Shown: positions 53,301-58,298 of the stretch, piece after piece
Numbering within the stretch: the stretch's first letter is position 1
Layout of the letters: the number at the start of each line of letters is the position of its first letter
DNA from: Macrostomum hystrix
Lineage: Eukaryota > Animalia > Platyhelminthes
Length of the DNA stretch: 64,000 bases
Direction: 5' to 3'
NCBI GenBank assembly: GCA_950097015.1
Contig: CATNEN010000035.1
Span: 1 to 64,000, forward strand
Notes under the pieces: model-generated
The model's input: the letters and a program-made list of their open reading frames with translations, nothing else
What the model was told of the DNA's origin: nothing
The model's database searches: none
Translations under genes and position numbers: made by a program

Positions 53301-54540
53301 GCTCCGGCTATTGCAGCTGGCTATCAAATGCGATTCTGTTTCATGGATCAGCTAATTGTGCGGCCAAGCGAGATGCTTATGCACTCGGGTCCGCTGACTA
53401 TGGCTGACGTCAAGACTGGCGCAACCACGGCATCCATTCGTGTCTTTCTGTTCCCGGATTTGCTGCTTTTGGCGCAGACGGGCTCCCAATTGCATCCTGG
53501 CCGGGATCAAGATGGCCTAGTCCACGAGCTGCTTCGGGATCCGATTCACATTCATCAAATTACGCAGTGCTTCGTTATTAAAGGCCACTCTGGTAAGAAA
53601 ATAGGCTATTTTTCGATATTTACTACTTTGGAGTTTGAGTTTGGATCCCAGTGAAGGAAGAAATTTGAAATTTTCGATACATATCGGTTAACAGCTTCGA
53701 AAATGATTTATGTTTATAAGTAACAAATGATGACTTCTTATATTGTAAAACGCTAGAATAGCTAAATATCATTACCGCAACAAACAATAGGGATAACAAA
53801 ACGAAAAAGCTAACTTGGAGTACCAGGGCATCGATCCCTGTACCTCTCGCATGCTAAGCGAGCGCTCTACCATTTGAGCTAGTACCCCTTAGTACTAGTG
53901 GTGATATTGATGTAATTTAAATTGTTTAGCGTCTGCAAAACCATCTTTTCGAGGAACCCCGTGGAAACTACATTTCATATCCATTGCTGTCGACATTTTG
54001 AAGCCGTTAAGCTTTTTACTAACTTACCATTTCCAAACAATTCACCACAATAACAAGGCATTACTTTTTTCTATAGAATAATCACAACGCAATGGCAGTC
54101 GTAGCATTTGAAAAAAACCACCTGCTCCCTGCTCCCGTCCCTTGGCTGAGCGTTAATTCACAGCCATAGTAAGCTTAACATTAGATAGAATTCAGTTACA
54201 CATATTGTGTGTGTGTGTGTGTGTGTGCGTGTGTGTATGTGTGTGCAAACTTAGAGCTACTGACGCATAAAAAAACAACTTTAAATGTAGAATTCTGATT
54301 AGAGTACTGAAATAAAAAACCTGAGAGTTAATTTTTAAGTCGTGATACATATTTATTCGTCTAGCGGCTCTAGCCAATACCAATCCGATTCCCAAAAACC
54401 CCGCAGACCTGAGCCTAAAGTACATCGGTGCGGACGGGGGCTCACAGCACCTGCGGCTTCGCTGCCCAGCTGGTGAACGAGACTGCTACGCGTGGTGTCG
54501 TCGGATTCAGGACCGACTGCTGCAGACAGTCATTCTGTAG
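47319..54540 (+). CDS. C2-PDZ-PH protein (RGS3/C2PA N-terminus-like, PsGEF-like), about 543 aa. Exons: 47319-47457 (tentative), 49468-49521, 49612-49670, 50438-50652, 51042-51102, 52316-52960, 53268-53592, 54407-54540
   Basis: Spliced C2 domain: EIKLAFHSTGKQLTVHVIEARNLRSQSAQRCNSFVRLGFSPE...KWQTGPVPNTDFPLFDRHF...LMVSVWSQ...EFLGCATFPVQSLI...SSWYRL. PDZ: RGLGFTVAGSGPSHVSKVERRSPADAAGVRAGDYIL. PH-like: MLMHSGPLTM...VFLFPDLLLLA...CYAWCRRIQDRL. All junctions are GT-AG with consistent phases (1,1,0,2,0,0,1); total 1632 nt. Confidence 0.85.
48360..49330. repeat. Minisatellite, 32-bp unit (GAAAATGAGACAGGGGAGAGTTGAGGCCTGAG), intronic
   Basis: About 30 tandem units. Confidence 0.95.
49681..50375. repeat. 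Minisatellite, 16-bp unit (GGGGATGGATTCAGCT), intronic
   Basis: Starts 10 nt after the GT donor at 49671. Confidence 0.96.
51415..52160. repeat. Minisatellite, 16-bp unit (TGTCTCATCTCTCCCG), intronic, highly homogeneous
   Basis: About 46 tandem units. Confidence 0.97.
53804..53808 (-). terminator. Pol III terminator (T5) 7 nt after the tRNA-Ala
   Basis: AAAAA on + at 53804-53808. Confidence 0.75.
53816..53888 (-). tRNA. tRNA-Ala-AGC: tRNA-Ala (anticodon AGC), 73 nt, antisense within the last intron of the C2-PDZ-PH gene
   Basis: Minus strand reads GGGGTACTAGCTCAAATGGTAGAGCGCTCGCTTAGCATGCGAGAGGTACAGGGATCGATGCCCTGGTACTCCA: 7-bp acceptor stem with G3:U70, AGC anticodon, A and B boxes. Confidence 0.97.
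54207..54245. repeat. (GT)n microsatellite
   Basis: About 19 GT dinucleotides with two interruptions. Confidence 0.9.
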
Positions 54541-56935
54541 GCCTTGTGATCACTGTGAACGCATTATGTTTCATTTATTTAATTCAGGTCTTAATTTTCG
54601 GAGGATCTACATCAGTTGCTTTTTAGTTGCGTAACCTTTAGCTACACAGATGACTCCACAAAGTTAATTTGTTAATTCATTTGCACAATGTCAAAAGATT
54701 CTATTACATTGCAGCGATGCATACGGAAAGTTTTTTATTTCATAGTTATTTAACTATAACATTTTAACTAAAAGTAAGTTTACTATTGTACAGATCAACA
54801 GCTAGCTTAAGTTTCTTATTGTAAGATTGCTTCGATCGTTAAATCGAATAAAACGTCGATGAAAATTTTACTATATATTTTTGAAAATTCTCGTTTTATT
54901 TTCGTATGATGTGACAGCGGCTTTTTAGGTGGTAATAATATTTTTAGGCATTTATTATTCCAATAATTTATATTCCCCTTTCCCTTCCAGATGACTCACC
55001 ATTTTTCCTGTGACCTTGAGCACCAACCCCTCCTCCGGTCGTAAATAATTTGCAGTTTTGTGGTTTTTCTTCGGTCAAATTCACCCACCATATAGCGCCA
55101 TATAGGAGGTGAGGACCATACATACAGTATGTTCTAATGTAAGTCTAATTTACTCGTAGGGTTTAGATAGTCTTGCACACGAGATCACATGGGAGCTCTC
55201 TCTTCATTGTCGTTCCTGCGCGCCAATTTTAAATGCCCGAAAGCTCTAATGGTATTGCTGTGTACCTGGACTGCTTGCTATTTTTGCATGAGGTCGATTT
55301 TCGTACCCGCTTAAATTTGAAAATAGCTTGTCTTTTATACTAATAAAATTAAATAGTTTTAACAAGTACTATACTATCCCCTTATAACATTTTATAGCTA
55401 GACGACCATAAGATGTCCTATAACAATACTACTGAAAAATAAGCAATACGTAGGCCTTGTCTAGCCTACGTAGCATTATATCAGAATATATAAAGATTGC
55501 TCGGGCTCGAGTAGTTGATTGAAGTGCACTTTGAAGGCAATTATACGCAGGTACTGTGGACATTGTGATTGAATTAGAGAACAGGATGAAAATGCAGTAT
55601 GTTTAAATGAAATATATTCTGTTTAAAACATTATATAACGATCTTTAAGAAACAAGCATACAATTTTTTATGAAATATGAAAAAACTATGTGTAAATTTA
55701 TGGACTTTTTACCGGCTCTACCGGTTTTAAAATTTACCGAACACCGGGTGGTGAAAAGGGGCGATATCACACACTAGAAGTGAATAACGATAAAAACAAT
55801 CGCAGCAGTGCTAGAGTTGAGTCAGAGATACAGACTCAATATAAATATTATTCTATTTCGTCTCGTGTTCATCGGTTTAAAATGCTCTGATGTAAGACGG
55901 ATTGAAAAACTGGCAACATTAGACATACTTCAGATGCTGATTTTATCGCCGTAACATTAGCGTTAATAATTAGTAGTAAAAAAGCTAACTATATAAAACT
56001 AACTAACTAACTATCAAACGTAACAAAAGCTCAAAATTTCAATAACGATCTGAAGATTTTACGAGCTCCGAGCTAAATGTTCAAACTTTGGTACAATTTA
56101 TCGAACACGTTTAAAAAGGCGGGTACGAAAAAGGGTTACAAAACGTGGTTCAAATGAAGGTTCAAATGTTCTCTCAAGGCCGCAGTCATTTGACTATTAA
56201 ACTCTGCTTTTCATTCTCTGCCATTGTGTGCCTCCACCAGCTCGGTAGAACTGTTTACTATATTTCTTTTGTGAGAAAATAAAAGGCAATTCGCGTCGCA
56301 AAAACGCTACCTCTATTTATTATTTTTTTAAATGTGAACTCAGAATGAGCATTGAAACTCAAAACTGAAGTTCCCTTTAAAGCAGACATTGATGTACAGG
56401 CTTGTGCAAAAAAGCTTTATTCTCATAATTTAACTTGACAGCATCAGCTGTGGGTGAATTTCAAGTTCGCGAAAACTTCGAACTATACACTAACTAAAAA
56501 ACACCTCATAGCGTTATAGTTCAGCTCTCATTGTCTACCTGTTTATTAGAAATTTCGCGCACTCGAAAGCCGAAGTTCCCTTTTGGGTTTTTGGCAGAGA
56601 AGCTTATGTGACGTTGTCTCTCTAATTTAATGTAAGTTTAATTATATGCTATTTCTAATTAAGTGCATTATTTTCGTTAGCTATATTTGTTAGGGATATT
56701 TCTTTGGTTTTCTATTAATATTTATAATGGTTTTGTTTTTGTGTACTACATAGTCGTTCGTATTCAAATGTGCTAATTAGGCCTTTCCAGGAAGGCCCCC
56801 ACACCCCCCTGGGCTTGTTCTACGACTGCAGAGTGCTGGTTGTTATTTTATCAGTGACTAATCTGAACTGTAGCTGTGTTTCAAGTGAAATCCATTGAGT
56901 AGCTCTGTAACCCATTAAAGATATAGCCAGCATTC

Positions 56936-56954
56936 GCCGTAAAGACGGTCTCTT
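56936..56954 (+). pseudogene. 5' part of a flatworm spliced-leader-like exon (GCCGTAAAGACGGTCTCTT)
   Basis: CCGT-AAAG-ACGG hairpin typical of flatworm SL 5' ends; identical over 19 nt to the Macrostomum SL as I recall it (not database-verified). Confidence 0.65.
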
Positions 56955-58056
56955 GACTCTCTTGGCCACTCTGTCCCTCGGGGCTGAGCATTTCATGAAG
57001 CTGGTACTCTGCCATAGAGTACTAGCGCGAGCCAGCGCTACCGGAGGTGGCCCTGGCGAATGGAAATTAAAAACCTCCAACTACTACTTTTTCCATCATT
57101 TTTCAAAAATAGTATATCACGCTTTTTTTTTCGACAAAAACAATTTTTTTGCCGAAATTTAATCAAAAATTTGCTATCATTCTAAACCAATGGCCTATTC
57201 AGGCCGGAGGTCTAAATTCCAACCTGTGTTTTCAGCGGGGCTTCCCTTAGAGCCTAAAGGTGTTCGGGGTTGCCTTCGTTGCCAAATGGATGCTCCTTTG
57301 AGCCCATTGGCCCCTTGTTGCTCGTAATGGGGTCCAGTCGAGGGACCGGCTTTAGGCTGGGGGCCGGTTCTTCGGTGTCTGAAGTATCCCTACGCGTGTG
57401 GGGCCTTTTAGGTGCTCAGGGGCATCAAATCTCCAAAACTCGGGGGGTTCTCCAGCCCTCTCTGGCCGTCTGTCTGTGGTGCCGTGGCAAGCAGGGGCCT
57501 CCTCCTTGGGGACGGGAGTCCGAGGCTTTGGAGGTTCACTTGGCTCTCAAGTTTCCCGGGAATGGCTGCCTAGCTGCTTAATCCTGTAATTCCCGACCCG
57601 GGGGCGGCCTGAGTGGGTTGGGTGGCCCTCAATAAACTCTTAAAACTCATTTTCTTTTCACTACTCAATACTTATTTTTTCCGGCTCCTATGCGATGGAG
57701 TGTTCAGAGGTCTCGAGAACTGTCTTTGCGGCCAGATGCGTTTGTGCTTGTACCAAGCGTATCCCAAACATTTGTGAGCATTTTTCCAACACTGCGTTTT
57801 TTTAATTCATGCGCAATTTTTTTTTGTTTTTATGCATACCTCAAAATATTTTCGTTTTTCGTTACTTCCAAAATCGTGTAAACTCCCCCCCACACCAGTT
57901 ACGCACTTGTTTTTAGCTTTGTGTTCTCGCACTTCACTGGTGTGGGGGGGAGTACCAACTTGACTGTATCGTGATTCCAAAAAAATAAACGGTAATCAGC
58001 GGCAGAGGCCCGGCTAGGGCCTGATCCGCGGGGGAGACCCCACTACCACTGAAAAA
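56955..58056 (+). mobile_element. Candidate 5'-truncated, decayed non-LTR retrotransposon inserted in the SL-like exon
   Basis: Flanked by a 14-bp direct repeat AAAGACG(G/A)TCTCTT (56941-56954 and 58057-58070). A-tract 58052-58059 at the 3' junction; 18-bp hairpin about 100 nt from the 3' end; weak RLE-like peptide. Confidence 0.6.
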
Positions 58057-58096
58057 AAAGACGATCTCTTAATTCGAAGGCCCAATTTATTGCATG
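58057..58096 (+). pseudogene. 3' part of the SL-like exon, ending in TTTATTGCATG
   Basis: AAAGACGATCTCTTAATTCGAAGGCCCAATTTATTGCATG is 35/40 identical to the recalled Macrostomum SL; conserved terminal ATG; no GT donor follows. Confidence 0.7.
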
Positions 58097-58153
58097 AGAG
58101 TGCTTTCCGCTACAGTTTTTGTAACGATTGATAATTTACCTTGCTTTTAAAAT

Positions 58154-58298
58154 AAACCGAAACTGCTACGCCTATTCGTTGAAACCGAAAATTCGTCATA
58201 CTTATATAAGTCGCAGTGATTCAGCCAGCGTGTCTTGCTTCTCCACGAAGACTTTTCTCAATATCGCGGCATATTTTAACTTTGCTATTTCCTATAAA
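58154..58298 (+). promoter_or_regulatory. Putative VLIG promoter: two ISRE/IRF-E-like motifs and a TATA box
   Basis: AAACCGAAACT (58154-58164), GAAACCGAAAA (58181-58191), TATAAA (58293-58298); strong donor TCG|GTAAGT at 58343/58344. Confidence 0.45.

What the first reader, a model, noticed from the sequence alone, without database searches (positions are those of the whole stretch)
56936..58096. Spliced-leader exon split by a retro-insertion with TSD and A-tail: candidate SL-targeting retrotransposon in a flatworm
Seen directly: GCCGT-[AAAGACGGTCTCTT]-1102-bp insert ending ...CCACTGAAAAA-[AAAGACGATCTCTT]-AATTCGAAGGCCCAATTTATTGCATG. That is a 14-bp direct repeat (13/14 identical) with an A-tract at the 3' junction, the signature of target-primed reverse transcription. 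Removing the insert and one repeat restores a 45-nt sequence with the flatworm SL 5' hairpin (CCGT/ACGG) and the terminal TGCATG, closely matching the Macrostomum SL as I recall it. Established: CRE/SLACS/CZAR elements in trypanosomatids and NeSL in nematodes insert site-specifically into SL RNA genes. Inference: this is a truncated relic of an analogous SL-specific element in Platyhelminthes. I am not aware of one being described, but cannot check.
Basis: partly seen in the sequence, partly recalled or inferred. Interest (0 to 1): 0.88.

Follow-up and report, generated by a model that had tools for sequence, protein, structure and literature searches.

The report
Spliced-leader-targeting retroposon in a flatworm
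A 1.1-kb non-coding jumping element sits at a fixed position inside a fossil copy of the flatworm spliced leader, and it belongs to a small family, driven by an APE-type LINE, that repeatedly lands at this same spot, a targeting habit published so far only for unrelated elements of trypanosomes and nematodes.

Summary
Window 56955-58056 is an insertion with a 5-A tail, flanked by a 14-bp repeat (13/14). Removing it restores a 45-nt sequence that matches the genome's real SL exon at 41/45 positions.

- The split "SL" is not an SL RNA gene. It is an SL relic inside a 478-bp solo-LTR-like repeat (56607-58200, 4-bp TSD CTTA) with at least 8 uninterrupted paralogues.
- The insert is a full-length, non-coding retroposon, not a truncated relic.
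- Its own 5' end is SL nt 1-19. An off-target copy on C3 carries that head too.
- Its 3' tail has two hairpins with compensatory changes. The tail is shared with LINEs encoding an APE endonuclease and RT, not a restriction-like endonuclease.

At least 9 further junctions use the same site (nt 5/6 and 19/20). They lie in two LTR families, in the elements' own heads, and in a fragment of a genuine SL gene unit. This is sequence-specific SL targeting that resembles CRE/SLACS/NeSL in function but not in ancestry.

The scan had already found a related intact APE LINE at the SL start in the rDNA-U1-SL array, on other DNA. I found no published description. I rate it a new variant of a known kind. The RT clade is unresolved.

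The parts
56603..56606 (+). CTTA, the left 4-bp target duplication of the host solo-LTR-like repeat
   Evidence: The same CTTA follows the repeat at 58201-58204. Paralogues show their own 4-bp TSDs: L058 GTAT, L059 ATAC, L054 ATTA.
56607..56954 (+). 5' part of the host repeat ('family A', starts TGTGACG). It ends with the first 19 nt of an SL-like sequence.
   Evidence: It is 84-90% identical to 8 paralogues.
56936..56954 (+). SL nt 1-19, GCCGTAAAGACGGTCTCTT. This stretch is both the upstream target half and the element's own SL-derived head. It has the canonical G at nt 13.
   Evidence: The same 19 nt precede the element at a non-SL site on C3. All family A paralogues have A or other bases at nt 13.
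56941..56954 (+). 5' copy of the 14-bp target-site duplication (SL nt 6-19)
56955..58056 (+). Body of a non-coding, poly(A)-tailed, non-autonomous retroposon (1102 bp). It starts GACTCTCTTGGCCACTCTGTCCCTCGGGGC.
   Evidence: A full-length paralogue lies at C3:8380862-8382012 (79%). Partial copies lie on C1 and C24. There is no ORF above 103 aa and no coding signal.
57883..57952 (+). Long hairpin with 16-bp perfect arms, CTCCCCCCCACACCAG / CTGGTGTGGGGGGGAG
   Evidence: It is also present in the C3 and C1 copies. Rfam gives only sub-threshold miRNA-like noise here.
58000..58056 (+). Conserved 3' tail: the GCGGCAGAG motif, hairpin 1 (58007-58021), CTGATCCGC, hairpin 2 (58030-58041), CCACTG and A5 (58052-58056)
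   Evidence: The tail is shared with RT-encoding LINE copies. In hairpin 1 all 4 variable pairs show compensatory changes, and 97.5% of cells are paired.
58057..58070 (+). 3' copy of the 14-bp target-site duplication. It has the host repeat's A at SL nt 13.
58057..58096 (+). SL-like nt 6-45 of the host repeat (variant AATTCGAAGGCC instead of ACTGCGAAGACT). It is followed by AGAGTG, not a GT donor.
58097..58200 (+). 3' part of the host solo-LTR-like repeat (ends TTCGTCATA)

Best explanation
Window 56955-58056 is an old, full-length copy of a non-autonomous, non-coding retroposon. It was mobilised by a small clade of APE-endonuclease/RT LINEs that recognise the spliced-leader DNA sequence itself.

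Proposed mechanism, with each step marked as shown or inferred.
- The LINE protein nicks the bottom strand opposite SL nt 5/6 (5'-...GTCTTT^ACGGC-3'). The position is shown by about ten junctions.
- The T-rich 3' end pairs with the poly(A) tail (inferred).
- RT, bound to the conserved two-hairpin 3' tail (structure shown by covariation, binding inferred), copies the RNA.
- The top strand is cut 14 bp downstream, between nt 19 and 20. This gives the constant TSD AAAGACGGTCTCTT (shown).
- Copies that sit in real SL genes are transcribed from the SL gene's upstream promoter, so element RNA begins with SL nt 1-19. This is inferred from the head carried by the off-target C3 copy and by several sub-families.
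- That head can pair with the target's own SL 5' half to seal the 5' junction. This is inferred from the canonical G13 in the window's 5' repeat versus A13 in the host repeat.

In this window the target was not an SL gene. It was an SL relic inside a solo-LTR-like repeat, which shows that the sequence, not the locus, is what is recognised.
For: 1. Paralogous empty sites with an exact 14-nt overlap.

2. The same two break points at independent places in different contexts.
- Window: LTR family A.
- C24: LTR family B, filled versus intact copies.
- C1:23260210, about 23258950 and 23258753: a tandem nest into element heads and a canonical-type SL.
- C1:23244929 and C1:26428656.
- C1:16045690 and C1:16047910. 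At the latter, sequence 97% identical to the real SL array unit starts exactly at SL nt 6 and includes the GTAAGACACC intron.
- C1:13634191: an SL-gene remnant.

3. The two elements upstream of the real SL fragment encode APE+RT. ORF2 is 963 aa with Exo_endo_phos_2 and RVT_1. ORF1 is 1123 aa with a CCHC knuckle. They end in the same tail motif as the window insert.

4. Hairpin covariation: 91% of cells are paired, 0/500 shuffles reach the observed covariation score, and the score falls when the partners are slid.

5. The off-target copy on C3 has its own TSD (AAGTCGCA) and still begins GCCGTAAAGACGGTCTCTT.

6. 5'-truncated LINE copies that lack the head use the same site. The first nick therefore does not depend on the head.

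7. A related intact LINE (45% RT identity) sits in the rDNA-U1-SL arrays with TSD cagaatctttGCCGT, so its top-strand cut is at the same nt 5/6 bond.
Against: - No interrupted SL gene was found in the assembled SL arrays on C15/C17/C42. The 'master copy in an SL gene' is therefore inferred, and promoter capture is unproven, because no usable RNA data were available.
- The family is tiny and old. Copies are 72-84% alike, and the C24 copy has lost its tail.
- The window element shares only about 75-130 nt of 3' tail with the LINEs I could read. Neither readable LINE 5' end shows the GACTCTCTTGGCC head: LINE1 is cut off upstream by another repeat, and the degenerate C1:23.24 Mb copy begins TCGGTCTAC after SL nt 19. 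The exact partner is not identified.
- Several C1 junctions lie within 20 kb of each other and may not all be independent events.
- The G13/A13 difference is a single base and could be a later mutation.
- The bottom-strand site TTT^A also fits a generic L1-like preference.
- The RT clade was not determined.
Confidence: 0.8

Rival explanations
1. Homology-driven event rather than endonuclease specificity. Under this view an SL-headed retroposon RNA or cDNA, or an existing copy, recombined with or was gene-converted into any SL-like sequence through its 19-nt head. The shared junctions would then reflect homology, not a sequence-specific nuclease.
For: The element carries SL nt 1-19. The window's 5' repeat has the element-type G13 rather than the host's A13.
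Against: The 3' junctions are poly(A) followed by AAAGACG, with a duplicated rather than replaced 14 bp. 5'-truncated LINE copies without any SL head land at the same bond and show the same TSD end. Nineteen nt of homology at only one end does not explain a fixed nick at nt 5/6.
Confidence: 0.08
2. Chance landing. Under this view an ordinary, non-specific LINE-mobilised retroposon, with a TTT/A nick preference, happened to fall into an SL relic.
For: The bottom-strand site 5'-CTTT^A fits a generic APE-LINE preference. One copy (C3) is at a non-SL site.
Against: About ten junctions lie at the identical bonds, against one off-target copy. SL-like sites number only about 100-150 in 220 Mb, so even one random hit at this exact bond is expected at roughly 1e-6 per insertion.
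Confidence: 0.05
3. One reading: a 5'-truncated relic of a restriction-like-endonuclease element of the CRE/SLACS/CZAR/NeSL kind.
For: The target type (SL exon) and the promoter-capture logic are the same (PMC4640811).
Against: The insert is full length relative to its C3 paralogue and is non-coding. The coding relatives at the same site have an N-terminal APE domain and no RLE or zinc-finger hits.
Confidence: 0.03
4. Assembly artefact: the insert was wrongly joined into the repeat.
For: The host is a multi-copy repeat. No long read or listed contig bridges the 5' junction.
Against: Exact contigs tile the insert at single-copy depth equal to the unique flanks. One contig runs from the insert into the 3' repeat. 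The TSD, the poly(A) and the same architecture at other loci are not what a chimera would produce.
Confidence: 0.03

Closest known systems
SLACS / CRE1 / CRE2 / CZAR (trypanosomatids) and NeSL-1 (nematodes): SL-exon-specific non-LTR retrotransposons
   Same: They insert at one fixed position inside the spliced-leader exon of a multicopy small-RNA gene. This leaves the first nucleotides of the SL upstream of the element, so the SL promoter can drive it. SL exons are listed among the known target types in PMC4640811. Promoter use by SLACS is from my own knowledge.
   Different: Those elements encode a C-terminal restriction-like endonuclease and belong to the early-branching CRE/NeSL clades. Here the coding partners have an N-terminal APE endonuclease plus a CCHC ORF1. 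The host phylum differs (Platyhelminthes). The TSD is 14 bp. A non-autonomous partner exists.
APE-type target-specific LINEs: the R1 clade (R1, TRAS, SART) and the Tx1 clade (Keno in U2 snRNA genes, Mutsu in 5S, Kibi/Koshi in microsatellites)
   Same: These have an APE endonuclease with sequence-specific nicking, constant TSDs and tandem insertions that sandwich a TSD. Small-RNA genes serve as safe targets (PMC4640811, PMC4494074). That R1 makes a 14-bp TSD is from my own knowledge.
   Different: In the papers I searched, no member of these clades is reported to target the SL. Clade membership of the flatworm LINEs was not tested. Their ORF1 carries an AlkB-like domain, which I did not find reported for LINEs.
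SINEU (snRNA-headed SINEs of crocodilians mobilised by target-specific Tx1-Mar) and R2 'SIDE' internally deleted non-autonomous elements
   Same: These are non-coding elements that share the LINE partner's target site and 3' tail. Their head comes from a Pol II small-RNA gene, and their transcription probably depends on flanking or target promoters (PMC4494074). SIDEs are cited from my own knowledge.
   Different: Here the head is only the first 19 nt of the SL, which is exactly the part left upstream of the insertion site. The body is 1.1 kb and has no recognisable small-RNA or LINE-internal homology.
Earlier finding of this scan (s1-084959): an intact APE LINE at the start of the SL gene in the rDNA-U1-SL array
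   Same: It is in the same genome and targets the same gene. Its 3' tail is related (AGAGCCCC..GGGCTGA) and RT identity is 45%. Its top-strand cut is at the same nt 5/6 bond.
   Different: That lineage duplicates positions -10 to +5 (cagaatctttGCCGT) and keeps the SL exon whole downstream. The lineage described here duplicates nt 6-19 and splits the exon. It is older, mostly decayed, and has a non-autonomous member.

Membership tests
CRE/NeSL-type SL-specific retrotransposons | Insertion at one fixed position within the SL exon | tested here: met
   About ten junctions lie at nt 5/6 and 19/20. One is in a genuine SL gene unit.
CRE/NeSL-type SL-specific retrotransposons | Restriction-like (PD-(D/E)xK) endonuclease C-terminal to RT, with N-terminal zinc fingers | tested here: not met
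   ORF2 has an N-terminal Exo_endo_phos_2/Exo_endo_phos (APE) domain followed by RVT_1. There is no RLE or C2H2 hit.
CRE/NeSL-type SL-specific retrotransposons | RT groups with the CRE or NeSL clade | not tested
   No reference RT set was available. In the PDB sequence search, L1 ORF2p and R2 scored alike.
APE-type target-specific LINEs (R1 / Tx1 clades) | APE endonuclease N-terminal to RT in ORF2 | tested here: met
   There is also a weak match to human APE1.
APE-type target-specific LINEs (R1 / Tx1 clades) | Constant target site with a TSD of fixed length, and tandem copies sandwiching a TSD | tested here: met
   The 14-bp AAAGACGGTCTCTT flanks or separates copies.
APE-type target-specific LINEs (R1 / Tx1 clades) | RT phylogeny places the element inside the R1 or Tx1 clade | not testable with these tools
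   No Repbase-type references were available. The nearest database proteins are unnamed: 3 at 42-51% identity and the rest at 32% or less.
SINE / non-autonomous LINE partner | No coding capacity, and a 3' tail shared with an autonomous LINE | tested here: met
SINE / non-autonomous LINE partner | Head with an internal Pol III promoter (tRNA, 7SL or 5S derived) | tested here: not met
   The head is SL nt 1-19. Rfam finds no tRNA, 5S or 7SL in 56600-58250.
Functional SL RNA gene (as the target) | SL exon followed by a GT donor, Sm-site intron and native upstream region | tested here: not met
   TGCATG is followed by AGAGTG. The flanks belong to a dispersed 478-bp repeat. Real SL genes have GTAAGACACC... 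and sit in 11.6-kb arrays.

The most novel reading that the evidence does not exclude
Macrostomum harbours a clade of APE-type LINEs, with a non-autonomous partner, that has independently evolved spliced-leader-exon targeting and SL-promoter capture. Element RNAs would then begin with the first 19 nt of the SL. The clade's ORF1 carries an AlkB-like RNA/DNA demethylase domain. This would be a third, convergent origin of SL targeting, the first in Lophotrochozoa and the first by an APE endonuclease.
Probability: 0.55. Interest if true: 0.75.

Novelty: new variant of a known kind. Interest (0 to 1): 0.62.

Why it matters
In the papers I searched, SL-exon targeting is described only for restriction-like-endonuclease elements of trypanosomatids and nematodes. 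An APE-type lineage doing the same in a flatworm would be a clean case of convergent 'safe-harbour' targeting of a multicopy small-RNA gene.

The case also offers a natural specificity experiment. The same two bonds are cut in real SL genes, in SL relics inside LTRs and in the elements' own heads.

There is a practical side as well. Partial SL sequences next to LINEs and LTRs in flatworm genomes have been read as scars of trans-spliced element RNAs (PMC12582326). Some of them may instead be target halves of SL-specific insertions. A compact protein that nicks a defined 14-bp-spaced site is also of interest for understanding how APE endonucleases acquire sequence specificity.

Tried and rejected
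- Rfam, at gathering threshold over the whole window and at E-value threshold over 56600-58250, found no SL, ribozyme, tRNA-like or R2-type element in the insert. Only sub-threshold miRNA-like hits fell on the long hairpin.
- I counted 14-mer pairs with at most 1 mismatch as a chance control. Simple repeats made the count uninformative.
- I looked for an RT partner downstream of other SL-headed copies. L109 has no RT. L108 has intronless INTS4-like frames that are unrelated.
- I tried to assign the LINE clade through PDB sequence searches. L1 and R2 scored alike, and the EN domain hit only APE1 weakly.
- I looked for target junctions in database contigs encoding the three closest ORF2 relatives (P0001-P0003). 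None reaches an SL flank.
- I asked whether the 59%-related LINEs in 6.5-kb tandem arrays (C12, C29) are SL-specific. The C12 junction keeps only AAAGA after the tail, and other copies have different flanks, so I make no claim.
I could therefore not read the 16.9-kb irregular rDNA-U1-SL units, the C42 array, or more LINE copies.
- I considered and rejected trans-splicing of the element RNA as the source of the head. Trans-splicing would add all 45 nt of the SL, not the first 19.

Full report
**Observation**

- GCCGT (56936-56940) is followed by AAAGACGGTCTCTT (56941-56954).
- A 1102-bp insert runs 56955-58056 and ends CCACTACCACTG plus five A.
- Then come AAAGACGATCTCTT (58057-58070) and AATTCGAAGGCCCAATTTATTGCATG (58071-58096).
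- After that comes AGAGTG, which is not a GT donor.

The two 14-mers agree at 13/14 positions. The restored 45-mer matches the real SL exon of this genome at 41/45 positions.

The real exon was read from about 20 tandem SL RNA genes on C15, C17 and C42. These carry GCCGTAAAGACGGTCTCTTACTGCGAAGACTCAATTTATTGCATG followed by GTAAGACACCG. Their last 35 nt equal the published M. lignano SL (PMC8629364). The genome is 220 Mb in 42 contigs and is a Macrostomum.

**What the target is**

The sequence on both sides of the insert is not an SL gene. It belongs to a dispersed repeat that I call family A.
- Eight other copies have the same upstream flank (..gatatagccagcattc) and downstream flank (agagtgctttccgctaca..).
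- Those copies carry an uninterrupted SL-like 45-mer with the same variant, AATTCGAAGGCC.
- BLAST of the window against them gives a left block ending at 56954 and a right block starting at 58057. In seven of the eight, the two blocks overlap in the paralogue by exactly 14 nt. These copies serve as empty sites.
- The alignment and coordinates define a 478-bp unit at 56607-58200, not counting the insert.
- The unit starts TGTGACG and ends TTCGTCATA. In the window it is flanked by CTTA on both sides. Other copies have their own 4-bp duplications (GTAT, ATAC, ATTA).

I therefore read family A as a solo-LTR-like repeat carrying an SL relic. This fits earlier notes of this scan that several LTR families in this genome carry SL copies. 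My own survey found many such families as well.

**What the insert is**

The insert has no ORF of note and no Rfam match. A genome search found few relatives:
- a full-length copy at C3:8380862-8382012 (79% identity);
- partial or nested copies on C1 (23.258-23.260 Mb) and on C24.

The C3 copy is the key. It sits at a non-SL site with its own duplication (AAGTCGCA). It ends CCACTGT plus A9, and it begins GCCGTAAAGACGGTCTCTT. SL nt 1-19 are therefore part of the element's RNA.

The same SL(1-19) head, followed by GACTCTCTTGGCCACTCTGTCCCTCGGGGC or variants of it, precedes several otherwise different bodies (L009, L075, L091, L092).

In the window, the 5' copy of the repeat has G at SL nt 13, like the canonical SL and the element head. 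The 3' copy has A at nt 13, as do most of the family A paralogues; the more degenerate copies differ further, and none shows the canonical G in context. This suggests that the 5' junction was sealed through the element's own head. It is a single base, so I mark this step as inference.

**Site specificity**

The same two bonds recur at many places.
1. C24. An intact family B repeat reads tcgtttgaggtttgG-SL-gcttcaactcgc. The filled copy reads ..gaggattggCCGTAAAGACGGTCTCTT|gaccctcttggcc ... cattgtgc|AAAGACGTTCTCTTACTGCG..GCATGgctacaactcgc.
2. C1:23.258-23.260 Mb. This is a head-to-tail nest. One tail plus A7 is followed by AGACGGTCTCTT and then the next element's body. A diverged tail is followed by AAAGACAGTCTCTT. 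A third tail is followed by AAGACGGTCTCTTACTGCGAAGACTCAAT.
3. C1:23244929 and C1:26428656. In each, a tail is followed by AGACGGTCTCTT. At the second place the rest of an SL variant follows.
4. C1:16.045-16.048 Mb. Two elements lie in tandem, each followed by AAAGACGGTCTCTT. The second is followed by ACTGCG...TTGCATG|GTAAGACACC and 1.5 kb that is 97% identical to the real SL array unit. That homology starts exactly at SL nt 6.
5. C1:13634191. An SL remnant still has 8 nt of SL-gene-like upstream sequence. It carries the 3' end of an array-type LINE at about -10 and the present family's head after nt 19.

Against these I found one off-target copy, on C3. SL-like sites number only about 100-150 in 220 Mb, so chance is excluded.

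Some of the C1 junctions are close neighbours and may not all be independent. The contexts are clearly different, however: two LTR families, a real SL unit, an SL remnant and element heads.

**The coding partners**

The two tandem elements at C1:16.04 Mb encode protein.
- The upstream one has two open frames. ORF1 is 1123 aa, with a 2OG-Fe(II) oxygenase (AlkB-like) domain (E = 7e-20) and a CCHC knuckle. ORF2 is 963 aa, with Exo_endo_phos_2 (APE) and RVT_1.
- The downstream one is a 5'-truncated copy with 459 aa of RT. It is only 58% identical to the first.

Two diverged lineages therefore use the same site. A 5'-truncated copy with no SL head still lands there, so the first nick is set by the protein and not by head homology.

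Within the genome the RT search shows a discrete group at 43-63% identity. The group includes intact copies in 6.5-kb tandem arrays and the intact LINE inside the rDNA-U1-SL arrays (45%). Everything else is at 41% identity or below.

In the protein database only three unnamed proteins are close (42-51%). The rest are at 32% or less. I could not assign a Repbase clade.

**Shared 3' tail**

The window insert, its relatives and the LINEs all end with GCGGCAGAG, hairpin 1, CTGAYCCGC, hairpin 2, a short spacer and (A)n.
- Hairpin 1 reads GCCC/GGGC, CCCC/GGGG, CCCT/AGGG, TCTT/AAGA, TTTC/GAAA or TTCC/GGAA in different copies.
- All four of its variable pairs show double changes, and 97.5% of cells are paired.
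- Over the whole structure, 0/500 shuffles reach the observed covariation score, and the score falls when the partners are slid.
- Hairpin 2 also changes in a compensatory way and in length: GGGG/CCCC, GGGAC/GTCCC, GGGCAA/TTGCCC, GGTCAAA/TTTGACC.

This is the usual signature of the RNA element that a LINE reverse transcriptase recognises. It links the non-coding insert to these LINEs as a non-autonomous partner.

**Relation to the array LINE found earlier by this scan**

In C17 the intact LINE's 3' junction is ..gtagtaaacat|cagaatctttGCCGTAAAG. Its 5' junction is ..cagaatctttGCCGT|cggtctcgaactcc. It therefore duplicates positions -10 to +5. Its top-strand cut falls on the same nt 5/6 bond that the present family uses for its bottom-strand nick. 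The U1 gene start (ATACTTACCTGGC) lies about 330 bp upstream, which agrees with the rDNA-U1-SL cassette note. The present finding thus adds a second, older lineage that splits the exon, together with its non-autonomous member.

**Mechanism**

Shown:
- constant nick positions;
- a 14-bp TSD;
- a poly(A) 3' junction;
- a conserved, structured tail;
- APE+RT partners;
- the head carried to an off-target site.

Inferred:
- priming on the TTT 3' end;
- RT binding to the tail;
- transcription from the SL promoter giving RNAs that start at SL +1;
- head-assisted sealing of the 5' junction.

No interrupted SL gene is present in the assembled arrays. No usable RNA data were available either. Runs X2 and X3 of a second study hold exact low-depth contigs of the insert, but their type is unknown.

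**Literature**

SL exons are a known target of RLE-type elements, namely the CRE clade and NeSL. Target-specific APE LINEs are known in the R1 and Tx1 clades (PMC4640811). snRNA-headed, target-specific SINE-like elements mobilised by Tx1 are known in crocodilians (PMC4494074). A 2025 survey of parasitic flatworms noted partial leader sequences next to LTR and LINE elements and read them as trans-spliced element scars (PMC12582326). My searches found no description of an SL-targeting element in flatworms or of an APE-type SL-specific LINE.

**Verdict**

The feature is real. It is an SL-sequence-specific non-autonomous retroposon of an APE-LINE clade, inserted into an SL relic in a solo LTR. It works like CRE/SLACS/NeSL but is not a member of those clades. 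It is a new variant of a known kind, already touched by this scan at another locus.

Noticed in passing
L117:2201-5569 (C1:16037700-16041068); L123:915-3401 (C12); L124:2-2056 (Logan SRR24204725): ORF1 of this LINE clade carries an AlkB-like 2OG-Fe(II) oxygenase domain (PF13532, E = 7e-20 to 1e-22). A CCHC knuckle was also detected in two of the three (L117 and L124). The library holds a report of AlkB in orchid Gypsy elements (PMC9289625) but none for LINEs.
   Followed up: partly
L034 and L122 (C17:37755 to about 45035); the same spacing occurs on C42: An intact related LINE (ORF2 950 aa, 45% RT identity) sits in the rDNA-U1-SL array with TSD cagaatctttGCCGT (-10..+5 of the SL gene). Its 5' end reads CGGTCTCGAACTCC, which resembles SL nt 12-18.
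   Followed up: partly
L009 1400-1540 (C1:13634108-13634248): One SL remnant was hit by both lineages. The 3' end of an array-type LINE lies about 8-10 nt upstream of the SL start, and the present family's head lies after SL nt 19.
   Followed up: partly
L107/L108 (C25:4205964, minus strand): Another family A repeat is broken exactly after SL nt 19 (..GACGATCTCTT|cacggcaac..). No 3' half follows within 7 kb. Intronless INTS4-like open frames (627 and 382 aa) lie 1.7 kb downstream. This could be an aberrant event at the same nick site, or it could be unrelated.
   Followed up: partly
e.g. L061-L066, L076, L080, L081 (pairs 7.2-8.4 kb apart on C1, C8, C39): Several repeat families carry a whole SL-like sequence behind a conserved upstream flank (..cttgcgaactttaaaagatcgtgCCGTAAAG..CAATTTATTGCATAGCG..). 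They often occur as same-strand pairs about 7.2 kb apart, as the LTRs of one element would.
   Followed up: partly
C12:3682558-3697040 and C29:3905083-3931150: LINEs 59% identical in RT, with intact 985-1014-aa ORF2, stand in head-to-tail arrays with a period of about 6.5 kb. The C12 junction reads ..cgttttaacaacAAAGA|tttccgtgg. Their target is not established.
   Followed up: partly
L117:1-1994 and C1:23260620-23260920: An abundant repeat of about 2 kb (at least 40 copies, 88-98% alike) ends ..cacactccacatca(a/g)ttt. It lies immediately upstream of SL-LINE material at two separate C1 loci.
   Followed up: no
window 57883-57952: A perfect 16-bp inverted repeat forms a long hairpin inside the retroposon. 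It is conserved in the C3 and C1 copies, and its function is unknown.
   Followed up: partly
window 53816-53888 (-): A tRNA gene (Rfam RF00005, 54 bits).
   Followed up: no
C17:80492-97374 and C42:26270-43166: Two rDNA-U1-SL units are 16.9 kb long instead of 11.6 kb.
   Followed up: no
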